From: Phallusia mammillata
Taxonomy: Eukaryota
DNA length: 64,000 nucleotides
Assembly: GCA_965637545.1 (NCBI GenBank)
Contig: OZ281495.1
Location: 10,292,001-10,356,000 of the forward strand
Direction of reading: 5' to 3'
Made by a program: the position numbers and the translations under genes. Shown one piece after another: positions 17,101 through 53,420 of this stretch. The notes under the pieces were generated by a model. The model ran no database searches, was not told where the DNA came from, and saw only the letters and a program-made list of their open reading frames with translations. The stretch's first letter is position 1. Each line of letters begins with the position of its first letter.

Positions 17101-17803
17101 ACTACACATATAGATGGACGATTTGTGACATGACTTTCATAGTTGTTACGTCCAAGTTAAGCAAGATTGCGTACAGAGTAATATACGTGTTTATACCCTG
17201 CCAATATCCGCGAAACGCCATCTACTAACCTTAACGAGTATCGTGGCGTGGTTTGATCACGTAAGGAACCTGACCAAATTTTGCCACCCCACAAAAGAAA
17301 ATTTATGCTAAAAAATCGCCGCCTATGCTTGTTCCTTATAAGTTTGTCAACTGATTTTGACCGGAAAGTAAACATTTTCCATACCGTGATATAATTAGTA
17401 AAACACTAAAATTGTTGAAAGAATGATAATAGAACAGGGTATGATTTCCAGAATCAATTTACCAGGATTTTAGGTGGTTGTGAATTAACAAACAAATGCG
17501 TATGACTTAATTTCAAATGTTTACCTGGCATTGGTTCCCAACTGCAATAATGCCGTTAGCCAGATAAATGGACGTACGAAACATACTTGAGATTAATATT
17601 GAAGCAAAATTACAATTGGCGTCAATTACAATTTGTCCGCCACCGCTGGTGTCAGGTGGAGCAGCTCCACAAAATCCATCAACTGAAATCGACGTAAAAT
17701 AAATATCACACGTTTTATGAAATAAATTAATTTTATTCTTACCTTGACCTGTTCTCAGGAGAACCAGCACAAAAAAGAAATGCCCCCAGGCTTTAAAATC
17801 CAT
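14141..17803 (-). pseudogene. CUB-CUB-ZP array unit U1, lacking exon C and exons I-K
   Basis: Exons A 17743-17803, B 17525-17682, D 16302-16465, E 15795-15975, F 15588-15642, G 15127-15292, H 14714-14874, L 14141-14404. B ends phase 0 but D starts phase 1. Only the acceptor and first ~6 nt of exon I remain (14573-14578). H (phase 2) to L (phase 0) is out of frame. Confidence 0.85.
16500..17327 (-). mobile_element. One-ended DNA-transposon remnant occupying the position of U1 exon C
   Basis: Not homologous to the matching U2 region. Minus strand starts CATAGGCGGCG with GGGGTGGCA subterminal motifs at both ends. The weak reading FWWSKL...FAELALHML...ERS (16561-16761) resembles a hAT C-terminal domain. 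The second TIR is missing. Confidence 0.4.
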
Positions 17804-26300: not shown

Positions 26301-29300
26301 TCAACAATCTTATTGCCGCGTACGCCACCTTTGCTAATGATAACGAAACCATATCTCAAGCGCGAAAAGAATGCCAACAGGCTAAACGTGAACTCGATTT
26401 CCGTGTACAAGAATGGATAGTAAACGTCGAGAAATCTAAGGGTGACCACGAAACTCGTACAAGCTACTCGTCCAGCTCCAATCACGGTTCCGCAAGTATT
26501 CGAACGTCTGGTTCGACGGAAAGTTGCCGAAGGGCTGCTCGGGTGCGGCTGCGCGTGGCTCGCTTGTTGCGAAAGCAAGTTTACGAAGATGTAGCACTGA
26601 AGAAGCAACAAGTCGAGCATCAAGCTGCTATTGAGCAGCAGCAGGTCGCCCTCGAAGCCAAACCTGTCGTTTCTCTTGGAAACTGTTCTAGAGAGCCAGC
26701 ATACGTAACAACTAGATCACCCGCTGTGATCAAGACTCCGACGAAACATGTAAAGATGTCACTGCCGCATGTTCCGAAGATGGATGCAAAGCCAGTTCTT
26801 GCTCCTTCTGTCGGTCCACCTATCGATAGGTCACGCACCTGTTGCGACTCCTATCCTCCATACATGAACAAACCGCGTGCTTCTACCCCGCTTAAATGTG
26901 TACCTGACACTGATTTCGTACAACAGCAAATAGTCCTGCCTCAGCCGGCCATCAAGAAGTTCGACGGCGATCCGTTGAACTACTGGTCGTTTGTTCGTGC
27001 CATTGAGTCGCATGTTCATCGCAGAACAAAATCTGAAGAATCGCGACTTGTTTGCTTGCTTCAATACTGTGAAGATTCTGTTGCTGACAAACTCGAAATG
27101 TACAGCAAGGATACAGTCTCTGGGTATTCAAAGGCGCGTTCCCGACTGTATTATGATTATGGTCAGCCACACATTGTTGCCAATGCCTGCGAACGTCGCT
27201 TAAGGCTTTTCCCGCCCGTTAGACCCGATCGACCAAAGGAACTGATGGAGTTTTCTGATCTGCTTCTAAGATGCCGTAGCTCTCTGGAAGACATCCAAGA
27301 GTACGCGAGTTTGAATTCACTGGATATGTTGAAGCAATTGATCTGGAAACTTCCATTTGATCTTCAAAGGGAATGGGTGGAACGATCTTTCCAAGTGCTT
27401 GACGAGACCGGGAGACAAGCTGGATACCTTGCGTTTACAAGTTTCGTTGTGCGGTGCGCTCGTGTGGCCAATTCGCTGTTTGGAACAGAAGTGGTCTACG
27501 AGGCCGTGCGCGATAAACCGCGAATTGAAACAAGGAAAGGTTCAAGGGCCGCGGCATACAGCATCTCATTATCGAAGTTCGACAGGGCACGTTCTAAGAA
27601 TTCGCCAATTCTTGTTTCGTGTGTCTGTTGCAAGCAGTCACATGAATTGTCCGTGTGCCCGGAATTCGACAAAATGACACTGCTCAGGCGTCGTGAGTTT
27701 GTGCGCTCAAATAGCCTTTGTTTCAAATGTCTTTGTTCGGGTCATCGTTGTCGAAAATGTCCGATTCGGAAATCGTGCTCCGTTGAGGGTTGCGCTGGTA
27801 ACTTTCATCACACGAAGCTGCATGGAACCTTCAAGAGAAGGCCAGCTTTCAAAAATTCGAGAAATTCTGCCATGGTAACGACGAATGCGTCCGACAATAA
27901 CTGCGGGGTCTACCTCAATATCGTGGCGGTAAAGGTCAGACATAACGGGATTGAGGTACACACATATGCCTTTCTTGACCAAGGCTCTACTTCTACATTT
28001 TGTGAACAACGACTGATTGACAAACTCGGCTTGCAGCGTAAAGGTCGAAAAATCTGCTTGAGTACACTCACCGACAAATCCCGAGTGTATCAAGGTTCCA
28101 CGGTGTCCTTAACTGTCACGCCGTTTGAAGGTGGAGAACCTCTAAAGTTGAAAGAGGTTTTGTCCATTGACGAAATTCCTGTTTCGCCGAATTGTAATCC
28201 AGCACCGAGTGTTCTTCACGAGTTTTCACATCTTCAAGGTTGCAGCCTGCCCTGTTTGAAAGGAGGAACGGTCACCATCCTCATTGGCGCTGACGTTCCA
28301 TCTGCCTTTAACGTCCTGAGTACGTGCTCGGGTCCACAAGGTCCGTGTGCTGTAAAGACACCCCTTGGGTGGTCACTTTTTGGTCCCGAAGTTAGTTCGT
28401 CCGCTACGAACAAGACCGACGTCCGATGCATGAGAGTGGCCAAGGTTATGTACCAACAGGAAAGGAAAGGCAAATATAGCGACAGGAAACCAGTTCACGG
28501 TGCGCCTACATTTGGCAAGGAGCGAATCACTCTGGATTCAACAAAAAGGTCTGTCAAGCACCGCGATAAACGTTCAAAACTTCCGTTGTCACGGAAGGTT
28601 CGTGCAGAAACGCTGCAGGCTGGCCGCTCGATGGCTGGCAAGCGTCTCGTCAGTTTACACAGCGAAGGTTTCTGTGAAAAGGATGTTGATACGATGCAGA
28701 CTTACAATTCCAAGGGTCGTGCTGAAGAGGTTTCTACTCCCGGGCAATTTTTGTGTTTGCCGTTCAATTTGAATTCGAGTGAGAACAAGCTAGACAGGCG
28801 GCTTAACTGTTGTGCTAGGAGCCCAAAGGTCTGTCCTGATAATGCTGAAGTGCTGGGTCCTCACTTGGGTTGTGCTATGGAGCCTCCGAATGTTGACAGA
28901 ATTTGTTTTCATTTATGGCCTGATGGAAATTCATGCTGCTCTCCGACGCCTCATGGGATGAAAGTGCCCATGTTTGGGTCCTGGTTGTGTGATCTGCGAT
29001 CGTCTCGTGATGACGACATTGTTCCACTGATCGATGATTCCCGTTGCCACTTCAGTGAGAAGCTAATCTTTCGTGCCAATCCTGGTGGATTTCGAGGAGT
29101 TAATATCGAGCTCGCACTGGCGAGCGGCGGTACGCTCCGGTGTCCGGTTAAAGGACTTGACCACATTATTGATTCTGATGAGAGTTCGGCATCAGCCCCT
29201 CCGAGTGATTGCAGCCCAGACTTCTGGGATGAACGCCGAGTTGACTGTGCGGTGCGCTGGTGTTGAGGACTGTCCGACGTTGTTTTTGCCGCATTGCGAT

Positions 29301-32300
29301 GCGCGCGCGATTGGCGATGTTGTGTTTGAAAATGTGTCCCGCATTTTGTGGGGGAGTGTTACATCGCCATCGTACATATTATTATGTTTTCTATGTTTCC
29401 CGCCAGTAGGCTTAACTCACTTGTATGGCGCAATGTTGTGCAACCTGGTGACATTGTCTGTCACACATTTGGTGCTTATGATGTCACAACCTTGGCATTG
29501 TTTTACTGAAGTCCCAACTTGTAAGCGTGACTGCCTCGTGTTTATTAGCGACTGGATGTTATAGAGGCAGCATGCTTTATCTAATTGACCGGTTATGTTT
29601 GTTTCTTTGCTAACGAATAGGAAATTTGTGCTAACTGAACTGTTGCCGGTCGTCCAATGTGTAATTTGTGCATTTCTGGCCCACGGATCCCACCGTCGTC
29701 AGCCAACTTGCTGTTTGCTGTAAATAACTGTATTTTTCCGGTAAGCCTTGTTGCTTAAAGTCTCGCAGTTCGTTACTAATCTGTTTTGGTGATGTTTATT
29801 GAATTTGATGCTGTATTTGCAGAACCTAAAATCTCCTGATCGCTTTGAATGTTACTGTGACTCTGGTCCTATAATAGTTCGGTAAGAGTCAACTGTACTG
29901 ATAATTTCTCGTCTGTTTCCTTAACTAAATTAGTGCATATTTGCAGAAACCGCATTTGCCTTTGTGCTCGTCTTGCTGCTGAACCCTTGAGCACCGTCTC
30001 TGTCCTGAATTGCCTTAATAAAAGAATTCGTTATTTTGGCTCTTGGTGCCTTGGAGTTGTTGAGCGCGAGGAAAGGCGCGTTGAGAACCGTTCTAGGAAT
30101 TTAAGCGATCACCCCTGCTGTGCTGTCTGGGCGCATAGAGTCACGCCCTCTACCAATTAAAAGACAGCGCAACACCACTAATAAATGTACAGACTAACAG
30201 TATCAATTTGTTTTCGAAAAATCCGGGTCTGAAAGTGTAATTTGGCACATGGCGAGAAAGTTGATGTTTTCGATGCTTCTGTTTCTGTTTATTGACATGT
30301 AGGTCACAGTAGGGTAACAACTTTTGAATGTTTAAAAAGTTTTATGGTTTTAACCAATTTACTTAATTTTTTGTAGATTTCAAATAATTTATTTTTTTGA
30401 AAGCACATTTCTTTGTTTTTAAGGTTTAAACCAACACGACTTACCGATGCTACTGGGACGCATTGAGTAATGTTGAAAACAAAATATGGATGTTGAGTAT
30501 TTGTCACACAACTCGGATCAACGTCTTCAGGCTTAACATTCTCGTTGGGCGCGATGTACAAGATGTCAAATTCTTCGGCGTTCAACTTGTTTAGATTCTT
30601 TTCGTCAAGGCTATAATACAAAACAAGGTTTATGTGCAAAAAAGAAAGATAATTCTCTCACGCCACTCTAAATTGCATTGTTAACACTACAGAAAAACTG
30701 GCAACGTTTCACACGAGACATGCAACTGTACTTAAAGTAGAAATGTACCGAATATTCGGTTTTCCGAATTTTTTAAGCAAAGCGTTGATTTTGTACAAGG
30801 TAGATTGATTAAGCAACGATGTCACATTGGTAACAATTTTTATTTTTTAGATGGACTCCTAACAATGTTTAGGTGATTTGGTTGCACGGAAGCACAACAA
30901 GAAAACCTGATGTAGTTTTAACTAACAACATATTGACATCAGACTATTGGCATTTGGCAAAACAACTGCACAACGTTGTTCAAAACACACTCAAAATCTG
31001 CTTACTTGATAACCGTTGTTTCTCCACATTCAATTTGGGCAGGAGGAGGGGGAGGGGGAGGTGGTGGACAAGCTGCAAATCAACAACAGATAATAAGCGT
31101 TGCGCAGTCCTACATATTTTACACAAGCATCAACATGACATCGTGGCGATTTGACGGCAGACGTATATGATGAATTTGTATTTGTTGCACGGCAGACGTA
31201 TTTTGACGGCAGACGTATATGAAGAATTTGTATTTGTTGCACACATAACGAAACAACAGTCAGATCACACTTACTTCTCTCCACGTCAACATGAAGGTAA
31301 GTGTTAGAAGCCCCCGGTTGACTTTTGCTAGCATACATAAGTTGTACTTTGTCACCTCCAATGACCCAGGATTGGGAAAAATTAAACGCCCCGTTATAGG
31401 TTCCATACCTTGTTTGGGACCCAGTTTTACCCAAAGCATCCTCATCCCAGTTTATCTAAAAGGTCAGGAGCTATTTACATTGAATAACGTGAATGTATCT
31501 GAAATAGGATCGTTTTATAAATACATGAAATGGTGAATGTTAACACAGTTTAATTACTAAAACTTGTTGAATTATCCATCCGTTTGTCGGAGTGGTTCGT
31601 AACCGGGGATTAATTACTTATAAAGAGCAATTTGTATTTTTAGAGGTAATTTTCTATTTGTTATTTTCGTGACGTCATCCTCCAGTGACGTCTTAGTTTG
31701 TAGATTGTAGTAACGATAATAAAAAAGTTCGGAACCATCGGCCTTCGTAACACAATTCTAAGCAAGATATCCCTTACGAAAAGATAGTCTGCCGCTGAAA
31801 AGACCATGTCCAGGTTGAACTGAAAAGTACATCCGACCTCAGCCTCAAACTTCCAAACGCAAAATAAGCCGGGTGTTAGTGGTGGGCCTCTTTCAATTCT
31901 AGTAAAATCTTCATTGTACGTTTCCCCACAATCTTCCGTCGCTACAAACAAGTTGCGAAGTTGAACTTATCTTAGTTTATATTACAGGACCGCTAGTTTC
32001 AGAACGTTAAGCAAAACCTGATTTTTTCGCATGGCAATTGCCAAATCAAAGTTTATTTTTATTTAAAGATGAAAAAATTATCCGTACCCAAACATACGTC
32101 TTTAGATTCTAAAAATGTGCAAATTCTGTTCAATTAAAAAACTGTAAAAAATGCGCGTTTTTGTAGGTCATACATGCTTGGTGTCTCCAATCTAATGGAA
32201 AAGCAGCAGTGTTGATGCAGGTAAGAAATAAGTTGAAACCTGATGAACGCACACCACCGGTCTCTGTACCAACGTTAATAAAAGTGCCAAGCAACGTTGC

Positions 32301-33064
32301 AGTGTCATCCATTCCGTCAAAAACCTGTTCAGGCAAAATAAAATTAAAAGATAACAAATTTAAAACATTCAATATCGGCAAAAATTGTCCGACCTTTTAT
32401 GCCGAAGAAAGCCAATAAAGTCACATACTTTGAAATGCATTTCCGTAAGGTTTTACAATACATTTTGTCCTAATTTTAAGCTTACAAGTTAATAAAGAAA
32501 CAAACTTATTTCGTTGAAAAGCATCTTCAAAGGGTAATAGAAGACATTAGAATTAGAAAAGGCTAAATTCTTTTTCAATGAAATAAGCATTAAATTGTTC
32601 CTTACTAGATTGTCAACTGATTTTGACCCGAAAATAAACATTCCCCAACTTGTGATATAATCACCAAAACTTGGAAATTATTGCAAGAATGATAATAGAA
32701 CAGGGAAAGAATCAATTTATCAGGATTTAAGATGTTTTTTTTAACAAACAAATACGCATTACTTAATTTCAAATGCAGTATCTATGTTTACCTGGCATTG
32801 GTCCCCAATGAAGCCGTTAGCCAGATAAATGGACGTACGAAACATACTTGAGATTATTACTGAAGCAAAATTGCAATTGGCGTCAATTACAATTTGTCCG
32901 CCACCGCTGGTGTCACGTGGAGCAGCTCCACAAAATCCATCAACTGAAATCGACGTAAAATAGATACCACACGTTTTATGAAACAAATTAATTTTACTCT
33001 TACCTTGACCTATTGTCAGGAAAACCAGCACAAAAAACAAATGACCCCACGCTGTAAAATCCAT
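23383..33064 (-). CDS. CUB-CUB-ZP transmembrane protein, unit U2, full length, 599 aa (CUZD1-like architecture)
   Basis: Exons A 33004-33064, B 32792-32943, C 32174-32324, D 31778-31941, E 31275-31455, F 31006-31072, G 30445-30610, H 24949-25109, I 24633-24813, J 24322-24392, K 23872-24052, L 23383-23646; 1800 nt, all phases compatible. Signal MDFTAWGHLFFVLVFLTIGQG; CUB-like VFDG..LLGTF..VRSSG and CGETY..FCVWKF; ZP-C motifs CWAT, CPAS, FKFRSF, LYVHCDVTIC; KKRRRRR; EHP LLSAGPIII; TM. The CUB call is less certain than the ZP call. Confidence 0.9.
25191..30174 (+). mobile_element. Non-autonomous BEL/Pao element in U2 intron G/H, antisense to the host gene
   Basis: 818-bp LTRs 25191-26008 and 29357-30174 (TG...CA, no differences seen); TSD CCACT (25186-25190 and 30175-30179); PPT GTGGGGGAG; empty site AAAACATGCCACTAATAAATG in U1 near 14943. 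Confidence 0.96.
26057..29266 (+). CDS. BEL gag-protease ORF with vestigial RT and integrase-tail fragments (1069 aa)
   Basis: PAIKKFDGDPLNY gag motif, three Cys/His knuckles, AFLDQGSTSTF protease. Downstream there is no YxDD, RNase H or DDE motif, only eroded pieces such as DRICFHLWPDGN and GTLRCPVKGL. Confidence 0.9.
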   Translation: MDTCKIISYSIESSLKISAMETGKSVTPSLDFFSIADAHGGDKVSSCAYAWKQACWQCKELMLKARNVDLVKGYIPLVETIFNNLIAAYATFANDNETISQARKECQQAKRELDFRVQEWIVNVEKSKGDHETRTSYSSSSNHGSASIRTSGSTESCRRAARVRLRVARLLRKQVYEDVALKKQQVEHQAAIEQQQVALEAKPVVSLGNCSREPAYVTTRSPAVIKTPTKHVKMSLPHVPKMDAKPVLAPSVGPPIDRSRTCCDSYPPYMNKPRASTPLKCVPDTDFVQQQIVLPQPAIKKFDGDPLNYWSFVRAIESHVHRRTKSEESRLVCLLQYCEDSVADKLEMYSKDTVSGYSKARSRLYYDYGQPHIVANACERRLRLFPPVRPDRPKELMEFSDLLLRCRSSLEDIQEYASLNSLDMLKQLIWKLPFDLQREWVERSFQVLDETGRQAGYLAFTSFVVRCARVANSLFGTEVVYEAVRDKPRIETRKGSRAAAYSISLSKFDRARSKNSPILVSCVCCKQSHELSVCPEFDKMTLLRRREFVRSNSLCFKCLCSGHRCRKCPIRKSCSVEGCAGNFHHTKLHGTFKRRPAFKNSRNSAMVTTNASDNNCGVYLNIVAVKVRHNGIEVHTYAFLDQGSTSTFCEQRLIDKLGLQRKGRKICLSTLTDKSRVYQGSTVSLTVTPFEGGEPLKLKEVLSIDEIPVSPNCNPAPSVLHEFSHLQGCSLPCLKGGTVTILIGADVPSAFNVLSTCSGPQGPCAVKTPLGWSLFGPEVSSSATNKTDVRCMRVAKVMYQQERKGKYSDRKPVHGAPTFGKERITLDSTKRSVKHRDKRSKLPLSRKVRAETLQAGRSMAGKRLVSLHSEGFCEKDVDTMQTYNSKGRAEEVSTPGQFLCLPFNLNSSENKLDRRLNCCARSPKVCPDNAEVLGPHLGCAMEPPNVDRICFHLWPDGNSCCSPTPHGMKVPMFGSWLCDLRSSRDDDIVPLIDDSRCHFSEKLIFRANPGGFRGVNIELALASGGTLRCPVKGLDHIIDSDESSASAPPSDCSPDFWDERRVDCAVRWC

Positions 33065-38036: not shown

Positions 38037-40084
38037 GTAATGTTGAAAACAAAATATGGATGTTGAGTATTCGTCACACAACTCGGATCAACGTCTTCAG
38101 GCTTAACATTCTCGTTGGGCGCGATGTACAAGATGCGTTCAACTTGTTTAGATTCTTTTCGTCAAGGCTATGATACAAAACAAGGTTTATGTGCAAAAAA
38201 GAAAGATAATTCTCTCACGCCACTCTAAATTGCACTGTTAACACTACAGAAAAACTGGCAACGTTTCACACGAGACATGCAACTGTACTTAAAGTAGAAA
38301 TGTACCGAATATTCGGTTTTCCGAATTTTTTTGTTCAAAACACACTCAAAATCTGCTTACTTGATAACCGTTGTTTCTCCTCATTCAATTTGGGCAGGAG
38401 GAGGGGGAGGGGGAGGTGGTGGACAAGCTGCAAATCAACAACAGATAATAAGCGTTGCGCAGTCCTACATATTTTACACAAGCATCAACATGACATCGTG
38501 GCGATTTGACGGCAGACGTATATGATAAGAATTTGTATTTGTTACACACATAACAAAACAACAGTCAGATCACACTTACTTCTCTCCACGTCAACATGAA
38601 GGTAAGTGTTAGAAGCCCCCGGTTGACTTTTGCTAGCATACATAAGTTGCACTTTGTCACCTCCAATGACCCAGGATTGGGAAGAATCAAACGCCCCGTT
38701 ATAGGTTCCATACCTTGTTTGGGACCCAGTTTTACCCAAAGCATCCTCATCCCAGTTTATCTAAAAGGTCAGGAGCTATTTACACTGAATAACGTGAATG
38801 TATCTGAAATAGGATCGTTTTATAAATACATGAAATGGTGAATGTTAACACAGTTTAATTACTAAAACTTGTTGAATTATCCATCTGTTTGTCGGAGTGG
38901 TTCGTAACCGGTGATTAATTACTTATAAAGAGCAATTTGTATTTTTAGAGGTAATTTTCTATTTGTTATTTTCGTGACGTCATCCTCCAGTGACGTCTTA
39001 GTTTGTAGATTGTAGTAACGATAATAAAAAAGTTCGGAACCATCGGCCTTCGTAACACAATTCTAAGCAAGATATCCCTTACGAAAAGATAGTCTGCCGC
39101 TGAAAAGACCATGTCCAGGTTGAACTGAAAAGTACATCCGACCTCAGCCTCAAACTTCCAAACGCAAAATAAGCCGGGTGTTAGTGGTGGGCCTCTTTCA
39201 ATTCTAGTAAAATCTGTTAAAGGAGCAGTGTTGATGCAGGTAAGAAATGAGTTGAAACCTGATGAACGTACACCACCGGTCTCTGTACCAACGTTAATAA
39301 AAGTGCCAAGCAACGTTTCAGTGTCATCCTTTCCGTCAAACACCTGTTCAGGCAAACAAAAAATTAAAAGATAACAAATTTAAAACATTCAATATCGGCA
39401 AAAATTGTCCGACCTTTTAAGCCGAAGAAAGCCAATAAAGTCACATACTTTGAAATGCATTTCCGTAAGGTTTTACAATACATTTTTTCCTAATTTTAAG
39501 CTTACAAGTTAATAAAGAAACAAACTTATTTCGTTGAAAAGCATCTTCAAAGGGTAATAGAAGACATTAGAATTAGAAAAGGCTAAATTCTTTTTCAATG
39601 AAATAAGCATTAAATTGTTCCTTACTAGATTGTCAACTGATTTTGACCCGAAAATAAACATTCCCCAACTTGTGATATAATCACCAAAACTTGGAAATTA
39701 TTGCAAGAATGATAATAGAACAGGGAAAGAATCAATTTATCAGGATTTAAGATGTTTTTTTTAACAAACAAATACGCATTACTTAATTTCAAATGCAGTA
39801 TCTATGTTTACCTGGCATTGGTCCCCAATGAAGCCGTTAGCCAGATAAATGGACGTACGAAACATACTTGAGATTATTACTGAAGCAAAATTGCAATTGG
39901 CGTCAATTACAATTTGTCCGCCACCGCTGGTGTCACGTGGAGCAGCTCCACAAAATCCATCAACTGAAATCGACGTAAAATAGATACCACACGTTTTATG
40001 AAACAAATTAATTTTACTCTTACCTTGACCTATTGTCAGGAAAACCAGCACAAAAAACAAATGACCCCACGCTGTAAAATCCAT
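38015..40084 (-). pseudogene. Array unit U3: recent duplicate of the U2 5' half, with C-D exon fusion, a frameshift and no exons H-L
   Basis: Exons A 40024-40084, B 39812-39963, fused CD 39083-39343, E 38580-38760, F 38361-38427, G 38015-38167 (153 nt versus 166 nt, a 13-nt deletion). The A/B region translation is identical to U2. Confidence 0.88.
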
Positions 40085-43125: not shown

Positions 43126-46100
43126 CTAGTTTAAAGCGAAACGATACACAACACCACACACGAGAACGACCAGCACAACTGCAAGGAAAGCATACATTTC
43201 CTGGTCGTGCGAATCTTGAATGGATCGTAGCATTTCCTCAATATCAACGTATTGCACCCTTTTCCCATCATTTTCCTTCTGGAGCTCGGAGTAGGTGTGT
43301 TGAGAGGAGATGGTGATTGGACCAGCAGAAAGGAGTTGTTTATTTCCAGCGGTTGTTATCTCGCGACGACGGCGGCGCTTTTTGTCACACTAAAATGGAC
43401 GAAGGGCTTTTAGTTTTCCTGACTAAACGCGTTGGTCACTTAATTGATTAGCCTAAACACGGATTTTTTCGGATTTAAGTAATTTTCAGCGTTATAAGTT
43501 AACATGCCGTAAGCAGATATTTCTACCACTTGCAAAAGACAGCTTTTGTAGTTAGTCGTTCCAAATAAAAAGAATATTTTGCGATTTTGCGATGTATGAC
43601 GTTATCGCTTACCTCATCCGGGCAAAGTCCTGCGTCAGTATCACATATGGTGACGTCACAGTGCACGTACAATTCTTGTTCAGTGACGTTGGTCCACACA
43701 AAGGAACGAAATTTGAACTTTCCATAGATTGGGTGACTGTTTCTCATCACCACAATTGCATTGGCAGGATCGTATGGGTTTGATGCAGGGCAGCTGAATA
43801 ACAAAAAAACACAACGTTGTTGATTGCTTCTGTTTGAGCAAAAACGAAAATGTCGCTTTAGGCTATTGGCAAATATACTTCCGACAAGCAAAATTAGACC
43901 GTATAACGCATTTGAGAACGGAGGCGTTGCAAAAAGGGCCTTTTCGAGGAAGATGCACAATTTTTGTTCCAATATTTCGATGTTTTAAAACAACTACTTT
44001 AGGTAACGACAGAAACTTATTTCTGGCGACGCCGTCGTTGTAACTTATTTCTGGCGACGGGAAAGCAAAAACATGGTTTCCTCTTTTTAAACAAAACAAA
44101 AATTATTAATTTTAAGATTTATTATTAAGATTAATTCTTGATATTGTTTTAATGCTAAGCTATGTGTCATATGACATGTTATTTTACTTTGGTTCAGGTA
44201 GATATCAACAAAAAGATACCTGGCTGTGATGATGGGATATATTGGAGTGGACGTTGCTTCCATTCCCTCTGTAGCCCAGCATGACATCATCTACAACAAT
44301 AAATACATTATTGTTTTTGTTACAATTTCTTATCTAAACCACCATTAGGAATCATGTATTGATATGTTGTTGAATCGTCAAACCTAGTATCCCTTAACTT
44401 TTATTTCAGCACTTGCCACCTGATGTATTGAACTGGATTCAAAATTGGCCCTTCGGTTGTGTGCAAAAAGCTAATTGAGAACTTACATCAATTTGAAAAT
44501 TGTCTGCGGAATCAGGGAGATCAGAAAGTTCCACTTTGGCGAAAACGTAGTCAGAAACCATAACTGTGTCACCGTCGCTCAGAGGTTCTTCAAGTGAACC
44601 GTCGCTGTACAAATCTAATGACACCTCAAATTCTCCTTCTGCTGGATCAGTGTCAAATCCAATTTTCCTGCATTAACACAAGACCCACTGAATTATGAGC
44701 GAAAGCGTGTTTAATAATGTGCTCAGCAACTACATATGTCGTGAAACCTGAAAGTGTAAGTACAAATTTAATTCAGCTAACTTTGATATCTCGTGATATT
44801 TACATTATCTCCGGATTGATTTCAGATGAGCTGACTGTAACATTGGCATCAAACACACAGGTCACGTTAAGACAGTAGATTTTGTAGCGTTGCACGGGAG
44901 CCGATAGATCAAGGTATTTTTGGTTCCATATGATGTATGTTAGTTTGATCAGACCGTCAGATTTCTGGCATAATGTTAATTACGGTGTGTTAAACAACTT
45001 ATATGTTGAGGACACCCCTTTGATCAGAGACCGGTCCTTGCAAATTGGTTTATATTACTTGTACAATATTGAAGACACATATTTTTTAAATACTTTCCAT
45101 CTGTAAAAACATTAGCCTCTTACATTAATTATTATTTATACGGTTTTGAAGACGACATGAGGCTCATAATTTTCTTCAAAGTTTTTTATCATCAACATTT
45201 AATTTTTTTCTTTTATTTGCGTCTATCATTTTTAAGGTTTAAACCAACGCGACTTACTGAAGCTACTGGGACGCATTGAGTGATGTTGAAAACAAAATAT
45301 GGTTGTTGTATATTTGTCACACAACTCGGATCAACATCTTCAGGCTTAACATCCTCGCTCGGCGCGATGTATAAGATGTCAAGTGCTTCTGCGTTCAAGT
45401 TGTTCAGATTCTCTTCATCCAGACTATAAAGCAAAACAATGATTTTGTACGATGTATATTCATAATTTACTGACATAACTCTAAACTACATTTACATTTG
45501 AGCTGAACACGAACTGCAAACATATATTACAGTCAAAAACGTAACACTTTGTAATGAGAGCGTGAAAATATTTAGGTGATTGTGACTGAGTTGCACAGAA
45601 ACACATCAGAAAAGAATACTTTAACTCACTGCTGACATAGGCAACCGCCGGTCCGCGAGGGTTTCCTTGCCGGGCTGTATACTTTTTCAGGTATATTTTT
45701 TTAACATTCTGCCCTACTATCCCAGAGATGATAAACTAATTAAGACCTTATAATTGCTAAATATGTGTAGTTTTTTGACGGCCGGTGAGCGAAAAAATCA
45801 GTTTCAAAAATGGTCCGCAGCGCAAAAAAGATTGCCGACCCCTGCTTTAACTAATACCAATTTCATAAGACACGTCCGTAGTAAAATGAATCTATTGTCA
45901 AAACAAGTGCACAATGTGATTTTGAAGCAATACACGCTAAGATCAGCTTACTTGATAACCGTTGTTTCTCCGCATTCAGTTTCTGCAGAGTCATGGAATG
46001 AACAAACTGCAAACCAACAACAGGTAATTAGTAAGTTATTTCGCAGTCCTAGATATTTAATACAAGCATTCGTGTGAATAACGACGTGGCATGTTTCCTG

Positions 46101-46463
46101 GAATGAGCAAACAGCGATCGCAGGGAGTTTAAATTGTGTCCAACGTTTAAATAATTAAAAAAGGTTTGTTGATTTTTAGAAGAACTAGCATTGCCATGAA
46201 TGTAAAAAGACTTGCGTCTGAACGAGCGTGGTGAATTTAATAAATTCACTGAAACGAAATAAATCAAATCTATATGATAAAATTTTATCTGTGCCAAACT
46301 ATTGAATAAAATGCCAATCACACTTACACCTTTCCACGTCAACACAAAATTAGCGCAAAATTAATATTCGGAGTTTTATTACTAAAGAAATGTTATTCTT
46401 ACCTTGATCTATTGTCAGGACAACGAGTACAACAAACAACCGCCCCCATTTTGTAAAATACAT
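43126..46463 (-). CDS. Array unit U4: CUB-less signal-ZP-furin-TM protein, 379 aa
   Basis: Exons A 46403-46463, F 45952-46006, G 45258-45423, H 44804-44964, I 44487-44667, J 44220-44290, K 43613-43793, L 43126-43389; 1140 nt, no stops. A (phase 1) joins F (phase 1). Only an 18-nt scar of exon E remains (46328-46345). Confidence 0.82.
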
Positions 46464-48200
46464 TTTTAAACCCTTCGTTGAATAAATCAAACTAAAAACA
46501 GTCCGTTCTGTAAACGACCACAAGTAGCAATGAATACCCTTTATTGGATATCTGTGCTTTGTTTCACGGCATCAACGTTTCCGAGGAGCAGAAGGATCGG
46601 AGGATGTGTGTGACTGAGTGAATCATCTGTCCATAGGTTGTTTAACATACACGCTTTGCAAACGGTACGAACGATATGTTACACGTAGTTGCAGCAACAA
46701 AATAATAGCAAACAAAAACATGCATTCCATCGACTTGTCGTACATTTATCATGATAAATAATCAAACAGGAACTTTGACGGGCTTCAAAATTTAAAGATG
46801 AATCCAAAAAATAAATTTAGGGTCATTCAGGTTGGAGTGAGGCTTTATAATGACAATGGTAATTAAATCAACTTATAAACTTAGTTGATAACGTTACATT
46901 TAGTTCCTAACCCTATCCCAGTGTTACTTTTAATTTAGAATAACTGTTCTCTTTACAACATCTATCAGAATGTTGCAAAGTTTTGTGATTTGAGTTCTTA
47001 TGTTAGAAGCTCTTCCGTGTATCAATTGGTAGAGTGTTTCCAGTTTATATGCCTGATAAATAGCAGGGCCGGAAATATCGGGATTGTTCATCTGGTGTAA
47101 CACAAGCAACCTAAACCATTGTGTTTCGGCTACCGCAGTCCTCCTAGCTGCAACTACAGCTGGTCGCTGTTTCAGCCTTCGTGTACGATTTCCGTTACGT
47201 GTAACATCGTACCTTTTATAGTAGATTTAGGCAATGGGCTTCTTGATTGATTTGATATTCACCACAGACAAACAAAAAATGTGTACAACGAAACATCCAA
47301 CAACACGCCATTAAAGCCAAACCTATCTCAAATACAACAAACGAAAATAACGGTGATGAGTTTATCCTTTGGACGAGATTTTACAGTCTTAATGTTTGTG
47401 TCAACTGTCATCACAAGCTTCTTTTGGTTGTTTGAACCAATTAATCCACCTTGATGTGACCTGTTTGCATTGTTTTACGCCAGCAGCATTTTCAAAAGAA
47501 GGAGGGTTGAAGGATGCGTTTGGCTTAGTCATCTGTCGGTTTGCCATGGATTTTTTTAAAACGCACAGCACGCTTTGAAAAACCGCACCGGCGACATGCT
47601 ACACGTATCTGCGGAAACCAATGAAATCCAAACAAAATATGCATGCGTTACCTTTTAAATTTACAAGATATTGGATTAACTTCTGGTCAAATCAAGGCTC
47701 ATTTACCTTCGCTTCTTAACTTAAAATGCCGCAAAGTTCAAATAAACAGCTAACAACAGTCAACGATAGTCATATAACAGTTGCTACGAGTTTCTTGAAA
47801 TACTACTATTCACCAAACTTAACTTTCGTACACGGTTTACACTGCCCTACCGGCAGCTAAAAATATAGACGCTTAACTAACCGGAACATGAAATTTTTAC
47901 TATCTTAGCAAGTGTAACAGATGGCTAGAAGCGACAAGTTTATCATGCAGAATCTCATGTATATTACCGTGTATAAGCAGCAGAAAGAATATAGGTTTCA
48001 CAGATGAACAAGCACACAAAGTTTGGAAGAACAAAACAAATGTCACACTTCAATAAAGAACATCGCCGAACAGGCAACAGATATACGAAAGGCAAAAAGT
48101 GTCATTTAAAAACATTTCTTACACAGTACACCTGGTTCTACTTTCGAATATTCCTTTACAGCATGAAAAGTAACTTAGTTCTGTTCTCTGAACTATTTCG

Positions 48201-51200
48201 CTAGTTTAAAGCGAAACGGTACACAACGCCACAGACCAAAACGACCAGCACAACTCCGAGGAAAGCATACATTTCCTGGTCGTGCGAATCTTGAATGGAT
48301 CGTAGCATTTCCTCAACATCAACGTATTGCACCCTTTTCCCATCATTTTCCTTCTGGAGCTCGGAGTTGGTGTGTTGAGAGGAGATGATGATTGGACCAG
48401 CAGAAAGGAGTTGTTTATTTCCAGCGGTTGGTATCTCGCGACGACGGCGGCGCTTTTTGTCACACTGAAATGGACGAAGGGCAATTAGTGTTACTGACTG
48501 AATGCGTTGGTCACTTAATTGCTTAGTCCATAAAAGTCGTTATTTTTCGTATTTAAGTGATTTTCAGCATAAACAATTGACATGTCGAAAGGAGGAGGTG
48601 TTTCTATAACACTTGCAGAAGACAGCTTTATAATTAGTAGTTTCAAAAACTAATGATTATATTTCGATGCACATCAGTATGACGTTATCGCTTACTTCAT
48701 CCGGACAAATTCCTGCGTCAGTATCACATATGGTGACATCACAGTGCACGTACAGGGTTTGTTCAGTGACGTTGGTCCACACGAAGGAACGAAATTTGAA
48801 CTTTCCATAGATTGGGTGGCTGTTTCTCATCACCACAATTGCATTGGCAGGATCGTATGGGTTTGATGCAGGACAGCTGTAAAAAAACACAACGTTGCTG
48901 ATTGTTTTTTTGTGAGCAAACACAATTTTGTTCCAATATTTTGGTTGTTTAAAATAACTACTTTCAAAAACGACAAAAACTTATTTCTGCCGATGCCGCT
49001 TTACGGAAAAGCAAAAACATGGCTTCAAACTTTAAAATACAACAAAAAATATTAATATTAATTCGTCATGTTGTTTTAATGCCTAGGTATGTAATCATAC
49101 AACATGATATTTTACTTTGGCTTAAGCAAATATAAATAAAGTTGTACCTGGCTGTGATGATGGGATATATTGGAGTAGAAGTTGGTTCCATTCCCTCTGT
49201 AGCCCAGCATGACGTCATCTATAACAGGCCTGTCAAACTCGCGGCCCGCGGGCCGCATGCGGCCGACGAAGCCCTCCAATGCGGCCCACGAACAGTCAAC
49301 AACAATTGTAGTATTTTGTCAGACTTTTATCTAATTACACTAAATTTGTCTTACTTTTCAAGTTGAAAGCTATTATTTAAACTGACGTTTACCGAAACTT
49401 AATTTATACATACAAATTCATATGTTATGAATAGAAACGATAGTAATTGAACCGTTTCTTAAAGTTTCAGTCAAGGGTGTACAACCCGCGGCCGTACGGC
49501 CACATTGAAATATATGTACTGGCAGGCGTGATGTAATTAAAACTTCTTTGCCAAAACTTTTGATTTTCAAACTGCCCTAAACAGATTTTTGTGTTACCGA
49601 AAAGAGTATTACCAGCCTAGTAGCCATATGCGACAGACTTTTTGTAGGCGTATTGTGTGCAAACAATGCGAAAAACAGGTACAAAAAGCGTCACAATATA
49701 GATTATGACGTAATAATAGAGTTAAAACTGCGGGTCTTCACATTGTGGAGCTTAATCTGTATAATAAGTTGGAAATTAATCTGGGCTTTTTGGGCGTCAA
49801 TAGATGGTATATATATGATATAAACCTTTTTCTTGTAATTTTTAAACAAAAACAGCAGATAATTGGCTGCCGTTGGTGAAATAAGGATCTACAATGCGGT
49901 CGTCGTAGCGAAAAGGTTGTTTAAGTGTATACAACTAGATTAAAAATCACATGCGGCCCACGGCATAATTCCCAAACTGCAATGTGGCCCGCGAACCCCA
50001 CGAGTTTGACACCCCTGATCTATAACAATTAAAACAAGATTATTTTTTGTACCTGTTTAACTAGGCTAAAAAACGGTTCCCTATAGGATGGTTCTGGGTT
50101 TAGTTACCAAACCTGATACCCCTTAACTTATGTTTCATCACTTTACACATGTATTAAACAGGATGCTAAAATGCCTTTTCGATTGCGAAGCGATTTCAAG
50201 CAGACATTTACGAAAACTGAAAACGGTTAATTGCAAACTTACATCCACTTGAAAGTTGTCGGCGGAATCAGGGAGATCAGAAAGTTCCACTTTGGCAAAA
50301 ACGTAGTCGGAAACCATAACTGTGTCACCGTCGCTCAGTGGCTCTTCAAGTGAATCGTCACCGTACAAATCCAATGACACCTGAAATTCCCCTTCTGCTG
50401 GATCAGTGTCAAATCCAATTTTCCTGCATAAACACAAGACCGACTGACTTATGACCGAAAGTGTGTTTAATAATATGCTTAGCAGCTACAACTGTAATAT
50501 AACCTAGAAGTGTATAGGTAAAATTGCATTTTAGATAATTTGATATTGTGTGATATTTACATTATCTCGGGATTGATTTCAGATGAGCTGACTGTAACAT
50601 TGGCATCAAACACACAGGTCACGTTGAGACAATAGATTTTGTAGCGTTGAACAGGAGCCGATAGATCAAGGTATTTTTGGTTCCATATAATGTACGTTAG
50701 TTTGATCAGACCCTCGGATTTCTGGCAAAATGTTAGTTACGGTGTGTTAAACAACTAAGCTTTATGTTGAGATCAGCCCTTTAAGAAGAAATCGGTCCTT
50801 GCAAAGTGGTTTGTATTACTTGTACAAAATTGAAGACACAGATTTTTTAAAATAAGTTACTTTCCATCTGAAAAAATGGCTCCTATTGTTAACTATTATT
50901 TAGACGGCTTTAAAGACGACTGGAGGCTCACAATTGTCGTAAAAATTTTGTTGTCAACATTTTAAATTTGTTTTTTTCTGATTTGCATCCACAGAAAGTA
51001 ACTTCTGTCATTGTTAAGGTTTACCCCAACAAGACTCACTGTAGCTACTGGGACGCATTGAGTAATGTTGAAAACAAAAAATGGGCGTTGTCTATTTGTC
51101 ACACAACTCGGATCAACATCTTCAGGCTTAACATCCTCGCTGGGCGCGATGTACAAGATGTCAAGTTCGGAGGCGTTCAACTTGTTTAGATTTTCTTCGT

Positions 51201-53420
51201 TCAAGCTATAAGACACAACATTAATTTAGTACCAGGTAGATTGATCATTTACGTATACCATTGTAAGTTACACTTGCGTTTGAGTTCAAAATGGACTACA
51301 AAAAAAGACACAGTCAAAAGCGTAAAAACGTCGTTTTGAAGAAATGCACACAAAAACTACTTACTTAATATTTGTTGTTTGTCCACACTTAATGGATGCA
51401 GGGGGAGGGGGAAGTGGTGGACAAACTGCAAACCAACAACGCATGTAATTAGTCTATAGCGCTGTGTCATGATTTTGCCATGGATCTACAATGACAAAAT
51501 CCGAACGAGCAAGGACGAATATAATAAATTAACTCAAAGAAAATGGATCGAATCTTTATGATAGAAAGTGGTATCTGTGCCGAAATAACAAACAACAGTC
51601 GGATCACACTTACACATTTCCACGTCAACATGAAAGTAAGCGTATTCGGCTTGTGCCTCACTAACAAACATAAGTCGCATTTTGTCGCCCCTAACAAACC
51701 AACTTGTGGACACGCTAACTTCGGTGTTAAAAGTTCCATACCTTTTTGGCGTCCCAAAATTTTCTAAAGCATCCTCAGCATAGTTTATCTAAAATCAACA
51801 TATAAAATGACTTTAATGTATCCAAAAACATGATCGTTTAATGAATACATGAAATTGTAAAACAACACATTATAAACTATCAATCGGTCTGGCGCAGTGG
51901 TTTTAACTTGTGGGTAATTACTGACCAAGGTATAATTTTGTTTTTGTAATTACATAACCATTTGTTATTTTTGCGACTTCACCCTTCGTGGCGCCTTAAT
52001 TGGTAATTTTAGTTTTTTTTTTTTTAAACAGGAGTAATAAACGGTAGTTTTTTGAAACGGGAGTAACGGGAGTAATAAATTTAGCACTATTATATTGTAA
52101 CGCAATACCAACACGTTCTTTTTTCCTTACGAAAAGAACTTGTGTCGCTGCTAAGGTCAAGTTCAGCGTGAACTGTATAGCACATCCTAGACGAGCCTCA
52201 AACGTCCAAACGCAAAATTCACCGGCAGTCAGCGGTGGACCCCTTTCAATTCTAGTAAAATCTTCAGTGTACGTTTCCTCACAAATTTGATTCACTGCAA
52301 AGAAGTTGCTAAAATATTGATGCTGTATGGTAGGTTCGACTTGTTTATGGTTTATAAATCAGTGGCAGGCCTGTTGTACGAATACGATATTCGACGGGCA
52401 CACTGCCCAGGCTGTGTATGGATCATTTGGTAGAGCGCGAGTCCCTGGTTTATGTTACGAAATTGCTAAATCCTTTCGCACAGCTTTAATTGTATTAAAG
52501 TTTATTTTTATTTAAAAATACACTGGTGAATATGGTTACAATAAAAATAGCGGCTCTCATACTTACGACTTAGGATCGTAAAACGTACAAATCCTTTCCA
52601 AATACAAAAGTGTCTAAGCTGAAGGCCATGTAAGACACTCATACTTTAAGCATGTTTTTTAACTCTTAATAAGAGTTGTTTTCAAATCGTAATAAAAATC
52701 AGAACATACCTAATTGATATCTGAAATAAACTGGGTCAGGTCCAGTATTGGTACAGAGGAGGAATATACTCCCACTTAAAGAAAGTACACCACCGGTCGC
52801 CGAACCATCGCCAGTAAAAGTACCAAGCGGTATTCCATTGCCATCTGTTATGTCAAAAGCCTGCACGGCCAAAAACAAAACAATTTCACGACTCAAAACA
52901 ACCAACTGTGTTTTTAAAAGACCAACAAAATTAGGGTAGAAGAGAGCATTGGCATACTGAAAAAATCCAATACATAAAATAATCATTGTTACGTAAGGAA
53001 GATCAAACTAAATTGCTTGAGAACCACCGGAGCAGCCAACAAAAAAGCCACATCACACATTTGTACATGACTTTGTTGTTGTTTTTTGCATTGAGCAACA
53101 AAATAAGTCAAACTTGACTTTAAGTGCAGCATATTTGTTTACCTGGCATTGGCCTTCTTCAAAAATGGTACCTAGAGCAAGGTACATCGACGAGCGCATC
53201 GAACTTATTACTGATACCGAAGCAAAATCACAATCGCTGTCAATCGCAAGTAGTCCGCTATCGCTGTTTTCGGGAAGAGCATTTCCACAAAGTCCATCAA
53301 CTAAAGTTGGCGCAAAATGAATAGTCGGCGTGTTAAGAACAAAGTAAAGTTGTGTTTACCTTGACCTGTTTTCAGGACAACTAGCACAACAAGTAACCGC
53401 CCCAGTGCTTCAAAATACAT
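48201..53420 (-). CDS. CUB-CUB-ZP transmembrane protein, unit U5, full length, 597 aa
   Basis: Exons A 53360-53420, B 53143-53300, C 52710-52860, D 52131-52294, E 51614-51788, F 51365-51425, G 51040-51205, H 50561-50721, I 50243-50423, J 49148-49218, K 48696-48876, L 48201-48464; 1794 nt in frame. The exon-J acceptor is affected by a MITE. Confidence 0.85.
49225..50017. mobile_element. hAT MITE inserted at the exon-J splice acceptor of U5
   Basis: TIR CAGG(CC/GG)TGTCAAACTC; TSD ATCTATAA (49217-49224 and 50018-50025); near-identical sister copy at 54081-54845. Confidence 0.95.

What the first reader, a model, noticed from the sequence alone, without database searches (positions are those of the whole stretch)
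43126..46463. U4: headless ZP paralog made by deleting both CUB domains, with a fully intact frame
Exons B-D and most of E are deleted, leaving an 18-nt scar with its donor but no usable acceptor. Symmetric phase-1 boundaries let the signal exon splice straight to exon F. All eight exons have canonical sites and no stops (379 aa), unlike the damaged U1 and U3. It could serve as a spacer or structural subunit that dilutes or spaces CUB heads in a mixed ZP polymer (inference), and is a clear case of exon-phase-enabled domain loss.
Basis: partly seen in the sequence, partly recalled or inferred. Interest (0 to 1): 0.72.

Follow-up and report, generated by a model that had tools for sequence, protein, structure and literature searches.

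The report
Expressed headless ZP gene, sea squirt
One copy in a row of sea-squirt genes for filament-forming surface proteins has lost the exons for both of its outer CUB "head" domains yet stays in frame and appears in spliced RNA-like contigs; it is a clean, well-documented case of domain loss, not a new kind of system.

Summary
On the minus strand, 46463-43126 is an 8-exon gene with GT..AG at every intron and one open frame of 379 aa. It sits in a tandem array of CUB-CUB-ZP-TM genes of 597-599 aa in an ascidian genome.

U4 is the only copy of nine examined that lacks head exons B-E. Intron 1 keeps a 16-nt remnant of exon E (46343-46328) with its GTAAGT donor. The breakpoints lie in a short microhomology.

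B-E total 648 nt and all boundaries are phase 1, so exon A joins exon F in frame. Contigs of a public RNA-like run show all seven junctions, including A-to-F with no mismatch. DNA-like runs carry the deleted locus and lack the joints.

U4 keeps a full ZP module, an RRRRR cleavage site, a hydrophobic patch and a membrane anchor. Changes private to U4 in the ZP body give omega of about 0.24. Its former poly-proline linker is uniquely rewritten.

Two corrections: the scar is 16 nt, not 18, and the junction reads DQ-V-CSFHD, without Gly.

The "spacer in a mixed polymer" role is untested. U4 is a new member of a known kind (ZP-module-only proteins such as ZP3). Interest is modest.

The parts
46403..46463 (-). 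Exon A: start codon and signal peptide (20 codons plus 1 nt, ends in phase 1)
   Evidence: It is 18/20 aa identical to U6 exon A. Contig record 2 of run X1 covers 46473-46403.
46007..46402 (-). Intron 1 (396 nt), which holds the deletion junction
   Evidence: Run X1 skips exactly this stretch (joint 46006|46403).
46328..46343 (-). 16-nt remnant of the 3' end of exon E (second CUB domain), unspliced
   Evidence: Alignments A1 and A2; coordinates.
46322..46327 (-). Orphan GTAAGT donor of the former exon E
   Evidence: No joint uses it in run X1.
45952..46006 (-). Exon F: the former CUB2-to-ZP linker plus the first ZP-N strand with its first conserved Cys. Linker codons 46001-45978 encode SFHDSAET instead of poly-Pro.
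45258..45423 (-). Exon G (ZP-N)
   Evidence: Family alignment; fold of the paralogue.
44804..44964 (-). Exon H (end of ZP-N and the interdomain linker)
44487..44667 (-). Exon I (start of ZP-C)
   Evidence: Pfam PF00100, E=0.03 on the exon alone. Junctions seen.
44220..44290 (-). Exon J (ZP-C)
   Evidence: Pfam PF00100, E=0.035. Junctions seen.
43613..43793 (-). Exon K (ZP-C, with an FKF/FRSF FXF-type motif and four Cys)
   Evidence: Pfam PF00100, 32.6 bits against a cut-off of 24.6, E=9.7e-8. It differs from U2 exon K by 1 nt.
43126..43389 (-). Exon L: KKRRRRR cleavage site (43383-43363), EHP-like LLSAGPITISS (43335-43303), transmembrane segment (43191-43147) and stop (43128-43126)
   Evidence: Contig record 1 of X1 runs through it into the 3' UTR as far as 43000.

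Best explanation
U4 is a transcribed, intact gene for a protein that consists only of a ZP module. It arose inside a tandem array of CUB-CUB-ZP-TM genes of an ascidian. The closest public protein is a Phallusia mammillata 'alpha-tectorin-like' protein.

Shown:
- A deletion of about 1.67 kb removed exons B, C and D and all but the last 16 nt of exon E. Its ends lie in a short microhomology (CTTT.A.GTTGA), found at the intron 1/exon B boundary and in the tail of exon E.
- The lost exons add up to 648 nt and every boundary is phase 1, so the signal-peptide exon splices directly to exon F in frame.
- Public contigs show this transcript.

Inferred: the product is a precursor of the form signal peptide, about 10 new N-terminal residues, ZP-N, ZP-C, polybasic cleavage site, hydrophobic patch and transmembrane anchor. 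This is the layout of ZP3 and of the polymerising core of uromodulin. Cleavage at RRRRR would release the blocking patch and let the protein enter ZP filaments. These could be its own filaments or mixed ones with its CUB-bearing neighbours, whose ZP modules are about 90% identical.

Selection still acts on the ZP body. The now useless proline linker has been rewritten.
For: - Model and frame.
- Deletion topology, scar and microhomology.
- Phases and the 648-nt sum.
- U4 alone lacks head exons among nine copies (U1-U8 and C2:4.94 Mb).
- Transcript: run X1 has a 208-nt contig, 46473-46403 | 46006-45952 | 45423-45342, with 0 mismatches. It also has a 1188-nt contig that joins G-H-I-J-K-L through to the 3' UTR. 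All seven joints are CT..AC on the + strand, and X1 depth is zero in bins that lie wholly inside introns, except a bin over a high-copy repeat. The DNA-like runs X2 and X3 cover the introns and the deleted locus and lack the joints.
- ZP-C by Pfam on exons I, J and K.
- The body of paralogue P0001 (72% identical to U4) folds as a whole ZP module that matches uromodulin, ZPD and ZP3 filaments (E about 1e-13). Its head matches tandem-CUB proteins (PCPE-1, neuropilin, cubilin; E about 2e-11).
- Selection: pairwise omega of U4 against the six others is 0.14-0.22. Changes private to U4 are 8 synonymous and 7 non-synonymous, omega about 0.24, one-sided p=0.0075 against neutrality.
- Linker: all eight other copies have C-P-P-[PL]-P..., and U4 alone has CSFHDSAET. 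It differs from U6 at 11 of 24 nt, against 20 of 122 in the flanks, p=0.0045.
- Literature: release of the EHP-containing propeptide is required for incorporation into filaments, and N-terminal regions are dispensable for it (PMC7737619, read).
Against: - X1 is RNA only by the tool's guess, and it is a single run of contigs. There are no raw reads, no tissue and no expression level.
- Gene conversion homogenises the stalk. Exon K differs from U2 by 1 nt, and stalk dS (0.11-0.26) is below head dS (0.13-0.58, five of six pairs at 0.34 or more). Only 15 private substitutions exist, so an intact frame by itself says little.
- Omega on the U4 branch is not distinguishable from the others (Fisher p=0.38), and it rests on few sites. 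Two of the seven private replacements are variable between runs.
- D at position -2 before the junction may change where the signal peptide is cut; I did not test this.
- There is no protein evidence and no evidence that U4 polymerises.
- Both fold results come from low-confidence models (pLDDT 61 and 68) of a paralogue, not of U4 itself.
Confidence: 0.72

Rival explanations
1. U4 is a transcribed relic. It lost its function with its heads and makes a spliced RNA from an inherited promoter. Its frame is kept open only because gene conversion from working neighbours keeps overwriting the ZP exons.
For: The similarity pattern is a mosaic: exon K is 1 nt from U2 but 11 from U5, while exon H is 9 from U5 and 15 from U2. 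Only 15 private substitutions exist, so few disabling hits are expected even under neutrality. The broken copy U1 also shows few private replacements (2 non-synonymous, 4 synonymous), so the test has little power.
Against: Private changes cannot come from the sampled donors, and they are still biased towards synonymous (p=0.0075). Exon A, exon F and all splice sites lie in the poorly converted 5' part, which is about 20-30% diverged from every relative, yet they remain intact. The linker changed faster than the flanking intron sequence, which fits remodelling better than simple decay. No indels were seen in three runs.
Confidence: 0.2
2. One reading: U4 co-polymerises with its CUB-bearing paralogues and acts as a spacer that lowers the density of CUB heads along mixed ZP filaments.
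For: The ZP modules are about 90% identical to those of U2 and U5-U8. A contig with an exact U8-type exon G lies in the same run as the U4 transcript. ZP heteropolymers built from head-less ZP3 and N-terminally extended subunits are known (PMC7737619).
Against: There is nothing direct. Tissue and cell type are unknown, co-expression rests on one contig end, and no interaction test was possible because the spliced protein has no reference to hand to the tools. A homopolymer, use in a different tissue, or a regulatory or decoy role fit the data equally well.
Confidence: 0.2
3. The head-less structure is an assembly artefact, or the array ancestor was ZP-only and the other copies gained their CUB exons later.
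For: None was found. Tandem arrays are in general prone to collapse during assembly.
Against: Contigs of 2101 and 2193 nt from runs X2 and X3 run colinearly over 45448-46600 and 45355-46600, across the junction. A run from a different study carries the A-F transcript. The exon E remnant with its donor shows that the heads were lost, not gained.
Confidence: 0.02

Closest known systems
ZP3-type subunits: ZP-module-only egg-coat proteins (signal peptide, ZP-N, ZP-C, furin site, EHP, TM)
   Same: The domain layout is the same as in U4. ZP3 enters heteropolymeric filaments beside N-terminally extended subunits. The model of the paralogue's ZP module matches ZP3 structures.
   Different: There is no orthology. 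U4 is about 15% identical to ZP3 in the structural alignments and lacks the ZP3-specific ZP-C subdomain. It is a recent secondary derivative of a CUB-bearing gene. Egg-coat location is not shown.
Uromodulin and GP2 (polymerising ZP proteins with N-terminal arms)
   Same: These are the best structural matches for the retained module (E about 1e-13). The polybasic site is followed by an EHP-like LLSAGPITISS that resembles the uromodulin patch (from my own memory of the UMOD sequence). An FXF-type motif is present. The mechanism, cleavage that releases the EHP, is described in PMC7737619.
   Different: Uromodulin carries EGF and D8C arms and a GPI anchor. U4 has no arm and a transmembrane anchor.
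CUZD1 (two CUB domains plus a ZP domain, 607 aa; PMC3654630) and DMBT1
   Same: The full-length neighbours U2, U5, U7 and U8 (597-599 aa) have the CUZD1 layout of CUB-CUB-ZP with a C-terminal anchor. In-frame loss of phase-symmetric domain exons is known for DMBT1 (from my own knowledge, not checked here).
   Different: U4 lacks both CUBs. Orthology of the array to CUZD1 was not tested. Pfam does not recognise the ascidian heads as CUB.
Phallusia mammillata 'alpha-tectorin-like' protein A0A6F9DTY8 (P0001)
   Same: It is the closest public protein: 597 aa, 72% identical to U4 over the ZP part and 62% to U5 overall, with the same heads, poly-Pro linker, RRRRR site and TM.
   Different: It keeps both heads. 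Its counterpart in this genome is a separate locus at C2:14.63 Mb. The name is automatic, since alpha-tectorin has a different N-terminal architecture (from my own knowledge, not checked here).

Membership tests
ZP module proteins (PF00100 ZP-C plus ZP-N) | ZP-C domain recognised by profile | tested here: met
   Exon K alone scores 32.6 bits against a cut-off of 24.6. Exons I and J match the adjacent profile positions at E of about 0.03. Full-length relatives score E of 1e-18 to 1e-26.
ZP module proteins (PF00100 ZP-C plus ZP-N) | ZP-N domain upstream of ZP-C, with its conserved cysteines | tested here: inconclusive
   No Pfam ZP-N hit was found on exons G and H or on the full-length relatives. 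The model of P0001:246-525 aligns over about 270 columns to uromodulin, ZPD and ZP3 chains that include ZP-N, and U4 keeps the aligned Cys residues 32, 73, 89 and 125. U4 itself was not folded, because the spliced protein has no reference.
ZP module proteins (PF00100 ZP-C plus ZP-N) | Polymerisation control elements: polybasic cleavage site, EHP strand after it, and a membrane anchor | tested here: met
   By sequence: KKRRRRR at residues 295-301, LLSAGPITISS at 311-321 and a hydrophobic segment at 359-373. All are conserved across the family alignment. Their function was not tested.
ZP module proteins (PF00100 ZP-C plus ZP-N) | Forms or joins filaments | not testable with these tools
   This needs an expression and assembly assay.
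CUB domain (identity of the deleted heads) | Profile match to PF00431 | tested here: not met
   No CUB hit on the U5 or U2 head exons, apart from CUB_2 at E=0.074 on exon D. No hit on P0001. A Clavelina relative gives E=0.009, below the cut-off.
CUB domain (identity of the deleted heads) | CUB beta-sandwich fold, two in tandem | tested here: met
   The model of P0001:21-245 (pLDDT 61) matches PCPE-1 CUB1-CUB2, the neuropilin a1a2 domains, cubilin and Neto2 at E of 2e-11 to 1e-8. This was shown for a paralogue whose head aligns with that of U5.
CUZD1 orthologue group | Orthology to vertebrate CUZD1 | not tested
   Only the architecture was compared (PMC3654630).

The most novel reading that the evidence does not exclude
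The array encodes a recognition system with fast-evolving CUB heads (omega 0.6-1.0) on a stalk that is homogenised and polymerises. U4 would be a selected 'blank' subunit, with a remodelled N-terminus, that sets head spacing or valency in mixed filaments. That would make it a genetically encoded diluent of a variable surface lattice, for example in the egg coat or another ascidian extracellular matrix.
Probability: 0.15. Interest if true: 0.6.

Novelty: new member of a known kind. Interest (0 to 1): 0.35.

Why it matters
This is a rare case in which every step of a domain loss can be read off: the donor architecture in eight sister copies, the microhomology at the breakpoints, the orphan donor left behind, the phase arithmetic that keeps the frame, a transcript that uses the new junction, and the later rewriting of a linker that lost its purpose. 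It gives ascidian biologists a natural head-less control for asking what the variable CUB heads of this family do. It does not reveal a new mechanism.

Tried and rejected
- Pfam on single head exons and on P0001 did not call CUB, so I used a fold search instead.
- The search for homologous proteins with P0001 returned only P0001 itself. I therefore have no view of sister-species orthologues or of any annotated 379-aa protein.
- The large protein search with exon K found 39 relatives, all tunicate where named. None is a close head-less orthologue. Clavelina P0003 (410 aa) shares its N-terminus with the 645-aa P0004 and lacks the anchor. It is probably an alternative gene model, so I did not count it as a parallel loss.
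- Private changes in the broken copy U1, meant as a neutral control, were too few to use (2 non-synonymous, 4 synonymous).
- My automatic exon boundaries for U6 exon C and for exon E of the C2:4.94 Mb copy gave frame shifts. I did not resolve whether these are real, and I used only their G-L exons.
- The species could not be fixed. The P0001 counterpart in this genome is 79-98% identical exon by exon. I therefore call it an ascidian close to Phallusia and go no further.
- The joined, spliced U4 and U5 proteins were built only inside scripts from window.fa, for translation, local alignment and dN/dS. They were never sent to a database, family, fold or complex tool. Searches went exon by exon by reference, and folds used the public paralogue P0001. 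Complex prediction was not used for the same reason.
- A retrocopy as the source of the spliced contigs is unlikely. Exon K has no third 100% copy in the genome, and the DNA-like runs lack the joints.
Full report
**Observation**

Reading the minus strand of 46600-43000 and assembling the exons in a script gives eight exons:
- A: 46463-46403
- F: 46006-45952
- G: 45423-45258
- H: 44964-44804
- I: 44667-44487
- J: 44290-44220
- K: 43793-43613
- L: 43389-43126

Every intron is bounded by GT..AG.

There is one slip.

**Family context**

tblastn and blastn of U4 against the window and against 32 kb fetched upstream show a minus-strand tandem array.
- U1 lacks exons C, I, J and K.
- U2 is intact at 599 aa, with a large retro-element in intron G-H.
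- U3 runs only from exon A to G, with TGA at the first ZP-N Cys codon.
- U4 is the finding.
- U5 is intact at 597 aa.
- U6, U7 (599 aa) and U8 (598 aa) follow, and there is a dispersed copy at C2:4.94 Mb.

All of them except U4 carry four extra exons, B to E, between the signal exon and exon F.

The genome has 240 Mb in 312 contigs and well over 100 ZP-C exons. The nearest public protein is a 597-aa Phallusia mammillata "alpha-tectorin-like" protein, P0001. The next relatives are from Clavelina. The organism is therefore an ascidian close to Phallusia. The counterpart of P0001 in this genome is a separate locus at C2:14.63 Mb.

**The deletion**

For every other unit, homology to U4 upstream of the junction stops at 46346-46357. 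Homology to the tail of exon E and the E-F intron starts at 46352-46344.

The alignments show what lies at each side.
- In full-length units, intron 1 ends ...TTT[CA]AG followed by TTGATGG, the start of exon B.
- Exon E ends ...TTTCATGTTGACGTGGA..., followed by GTAAGT.
- U4 reads ...AATTTTGTGTTGACGTGGAAAGGT followed by GTAAGT.

The breakpoints therefore fall inside a shared CTTT.A.GTTGA microhomology. That fits a microhomology-mediated deletion of about 1.67 kb (U5 53300-51630).

What remains of exon E is 16 nt (46343-46328) plus its donor (46327-46322). The AG of intron 1 is gone, replaced by TGTG. The only AGs upstream of the remnant lie 4 and 20 nt after the exon A donor, too close to it to serve as an acceptor. 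The remnant cannot be spliced in.

**Why the frame survives**

A ends in phase 1. B+C and D+E are each phase 1-1 modules. F starts in phase 1. B to E total 648 nt, or 216 codons, in both U5 and U2. Joining A to F is therefore in frame.

**Are the lost parts CUB domains?**

Pfam says no on single exons (the best hit is CUB_2 at E=0.074) and no on P0001.

A model of P0001:21-245, built from a six-sequence alignment with a low pLDDT of 61, is all-beta. Its top Foldseek matches are tandem-CUB proteins: PCPE-1 CUB1-CUB2, the neuropilin a1a2 domains, cubilin and Neto2, at E of 2e-11 to 1e-8. The heads of U5 and U2 align with P0001 without large gaps.

"CUB" is therefore supported at fold level for a paralogue, not by profile.

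**What is retained**

Exons I, J and K match consecutive parts of Pfam ZP-C, and exon K alone is above the gathering score.

A model of P0001:246-525 (pLDDT 68; 72% identical to U4 here) matches uromodulin, ZPD and ZP3 filament subunits over about 270 columns, at E of about 1e-13. That is a whole ZP-N plus ZP-C module.

U4 also keeps the following:
- KKRRRRR at residues 295-301
- an EHP-like LLSAGPITISS at 311-321
- an FXF-type motif in exon K
- four N-glycosylation sequons
- a C-terminal hydrophobic anchor at 359-373

According to PMC7737619, release of the EHP-containing propeptide is what licenses ZP proteins to enter filaments, and N-terminal regions are dispensable for incorporation. U4 thus has the layout of ZP3 or of the uromodulin core.

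**Expression**

One run search and one read-laying run were allowed.

Run X1 is called "RNA?" by the tool's guess. It holds 24% of the sampled words, against an exon share of 32%. Its depth is zero in bins that lie wholly inside introns, except one bin over a high-copy repeat. It yields two contigs.
- A 208-nt contig covers 46473-46403 | 46006-45952 | 45423-45342 with no mismatch.
- A 1188-nt contig joins G-H-I-J-K-L and runs into the 3' UTR.

All seven joints coincide with the predicted splice sites (CT..AC on the + strand).

U5 exon A differs from U4 at 13 of 61 nt, so the first contig comes from U4 and not from exon skipping in a neighbour.

Runs X2 and X3 come from another study. They cover the introns, carry the deleted locus on contigs of 2.1-2.2 kb, and lack the joints. 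The structure is therefore neither an assembly artefact nor a retrocopy. No extra 100% copy of exon K exists in the genome.

No indels were reported. The exonic differences are synonymous or conservative, and two of them (T318I and Y325N) return to the family consensus.

A loose contig end in X1 matches U8 exon G exactly. This is a weak hint that a head-bearing copy is expressed in the same sample.

The limits are plain: contigs only, one RNA-like run, and no information on tissue or level.

**Selection**

| Comparison | dN | dS | omega |
|---|---|---|---|
| Stalk exons G-L (1020 nt), seven intact copies, pairwise | 0.02-0.045 | 0.11-0.26 | 0.11-0.26 |
| Stalk, U4 against the six others | | | 0.14-0.22 |
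| Heads, pairwise | 0.12-0.36 | 0.13-0.58 | 0.57-0.98 |

The heads are fast-evolving and the stalk is constrained and partly homogenised. The mosaic distances point the same way. Exon K of U4 is 1 nt from U2 but 11 from U5, while exon H is closer to U5.

This matters for U4, because conversion from working neighbours could keep its frame open without any selection on U4 itself. I therefore counted only codons where U4 differs and all six others agree. There are 8 synonymous and 7 non-synonymous changes. That gives omega of about 0.24, with p=0.0075 against the neutral 22:78 expectation. It is not different from the other copies (p=0.38).

The sample is small, and the broken copy U1 was uninformative as a control.

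**The linker**

Exon F encodes C-P-P-[PL]-P-P... in all eight other copies, even the pseudogenes. In U4 it encodes C-S-F-H-D-S-A-E-T.

Against its nearest 5' relative, U6, the 24 linker nucleotides differ at 11 positions. The 122 flanking positions of the same alignment, mostly intron, differ at 20 (p=0.0045).

The spacer between CUB2 and ZP-N lost its constraint, and may have been reshaped, once there was nothing left to space. This also shows that the deletion is not very recent. Exon A and its flanks are about 20% diverged from U6 and about 30% from the rest.

**Interpretation**

I take three things as shown:
1. U4 derives from a head-bearing gene by one microhomology-flanked deletion.
2. 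Phase symmetry keeps the frame.
3. The predicted mRNA exists.

I take as likely (about 0.7) that U4 makes a functional protein consisting only of a ZP module.

The function is inferred. The protein would be secreted, cleaved at the polybasic site, and incorporated into filaments, either alone or with its neighbours. The main rival is a transcribed relic kept open by gene conversion (about 0.2).

**Comparison and verdict**

The full-length copies have the CUZD1 layout of two CUB domains and a ZP domain, about 600 aa (PMC3654630). U4 has the ZP3 layout.

Head-less ZP subunits, heteropolymers of head-less and extended subunits, and in-frame loss of phase-symmetric domain exons are all established. 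Ascidian egg coats contain many ZP proteins (PMC9265791), but nothing here places this family in the egg coat.

U4 is therefore a new member of a known kind, reached by a textbook route that is unusually well documented here. Interest is modest (0.35).

The spliced proteins were never sent to search, fold or complex tools, because they have no reference. That step is left out. The earlier notes on this window about the array, the MITE and the BEL element were used only as orientation.

Noticed in passing
window 38361-38427 (U3 exon F); U3 spans about 40084-37979: U3 has TGA in place of the first ZP-N cysteine codon, and nothing matches after exon G. Its 5' half gives the same blast scores against U4 as the 5' half of U2 (40318-40010 against 33298-32990). 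U2 and U3 therefore look like a recent segmental duplication.
   Followed up: partly
window 14141-17803 (U1): U1 keeps exons A, B, D, E, F, G, H and L with good splice sites, but exons C, I, J and K find no match. It is a second, different internal-deletion derivative, and this one destroys the ZP-C domain.
   Followed up: partly
window 48201-53420, 23383-33064; L001, L002, L004, L005: The heads evolve at omega 0.57-0.98 with dS 0.13-0.58 (five of six pairs at 0.34 or more). The stalks of the same genes show omega 0.11-0.26 with dS 0.11-0.26. The heads may be diversifying while the ZP/TM stalk is homogenised by gene conversion.
   Followed up: partly
window 45640-45850 (U4 intron F-G): A short repeat element lies here. 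DNA-like runs show 20- to 25-fold higher summed contig depth in this bin than in the neighbouring intron (bin 45783-45903). Contigs break at 45587, 45800 and 45844-45849.
   Followed up: no
window 49218-50030 (U5 intron I-J): An insertion of about 0.8 kb has inverted GGCCCGCGGGCC-type ends. It is flanked by a duplicated ...GTTATAGAT, which repeats the 3' splice site of exon J. The U5 frame is intact when the downstream copy is used.
   Followed up: partly
G000 C3:2.9-5.8 Mb and other loci: More than 100 further ZP-C exons with 45-55% identity to exon K cluster on contig C3. This is a very large, separate expansion of ZP genes in this genome. Closer arrays lie at C7:18.19-18.23 Mb (four units), C5:6.81 Mb and C8:11.44 Mb.
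   Followed up: no
P0003 against P0004 (Clavelina lepadiformis): A 410-aa Clavelina protein shares its N-terminus with a 645-aa relative but skips most of the head and ends before the EGF and TM parts. It is either an alternative gene model or a parallel head-less form.
   Followed up: no
window 43293 and 43313: Two of the replacements private to U4 (Y325 and T318) read as the family-consensus N and I in contigs of other runs. These are either polymorphisms of U4 or short contigs from paralogues.
   Followed up: partly
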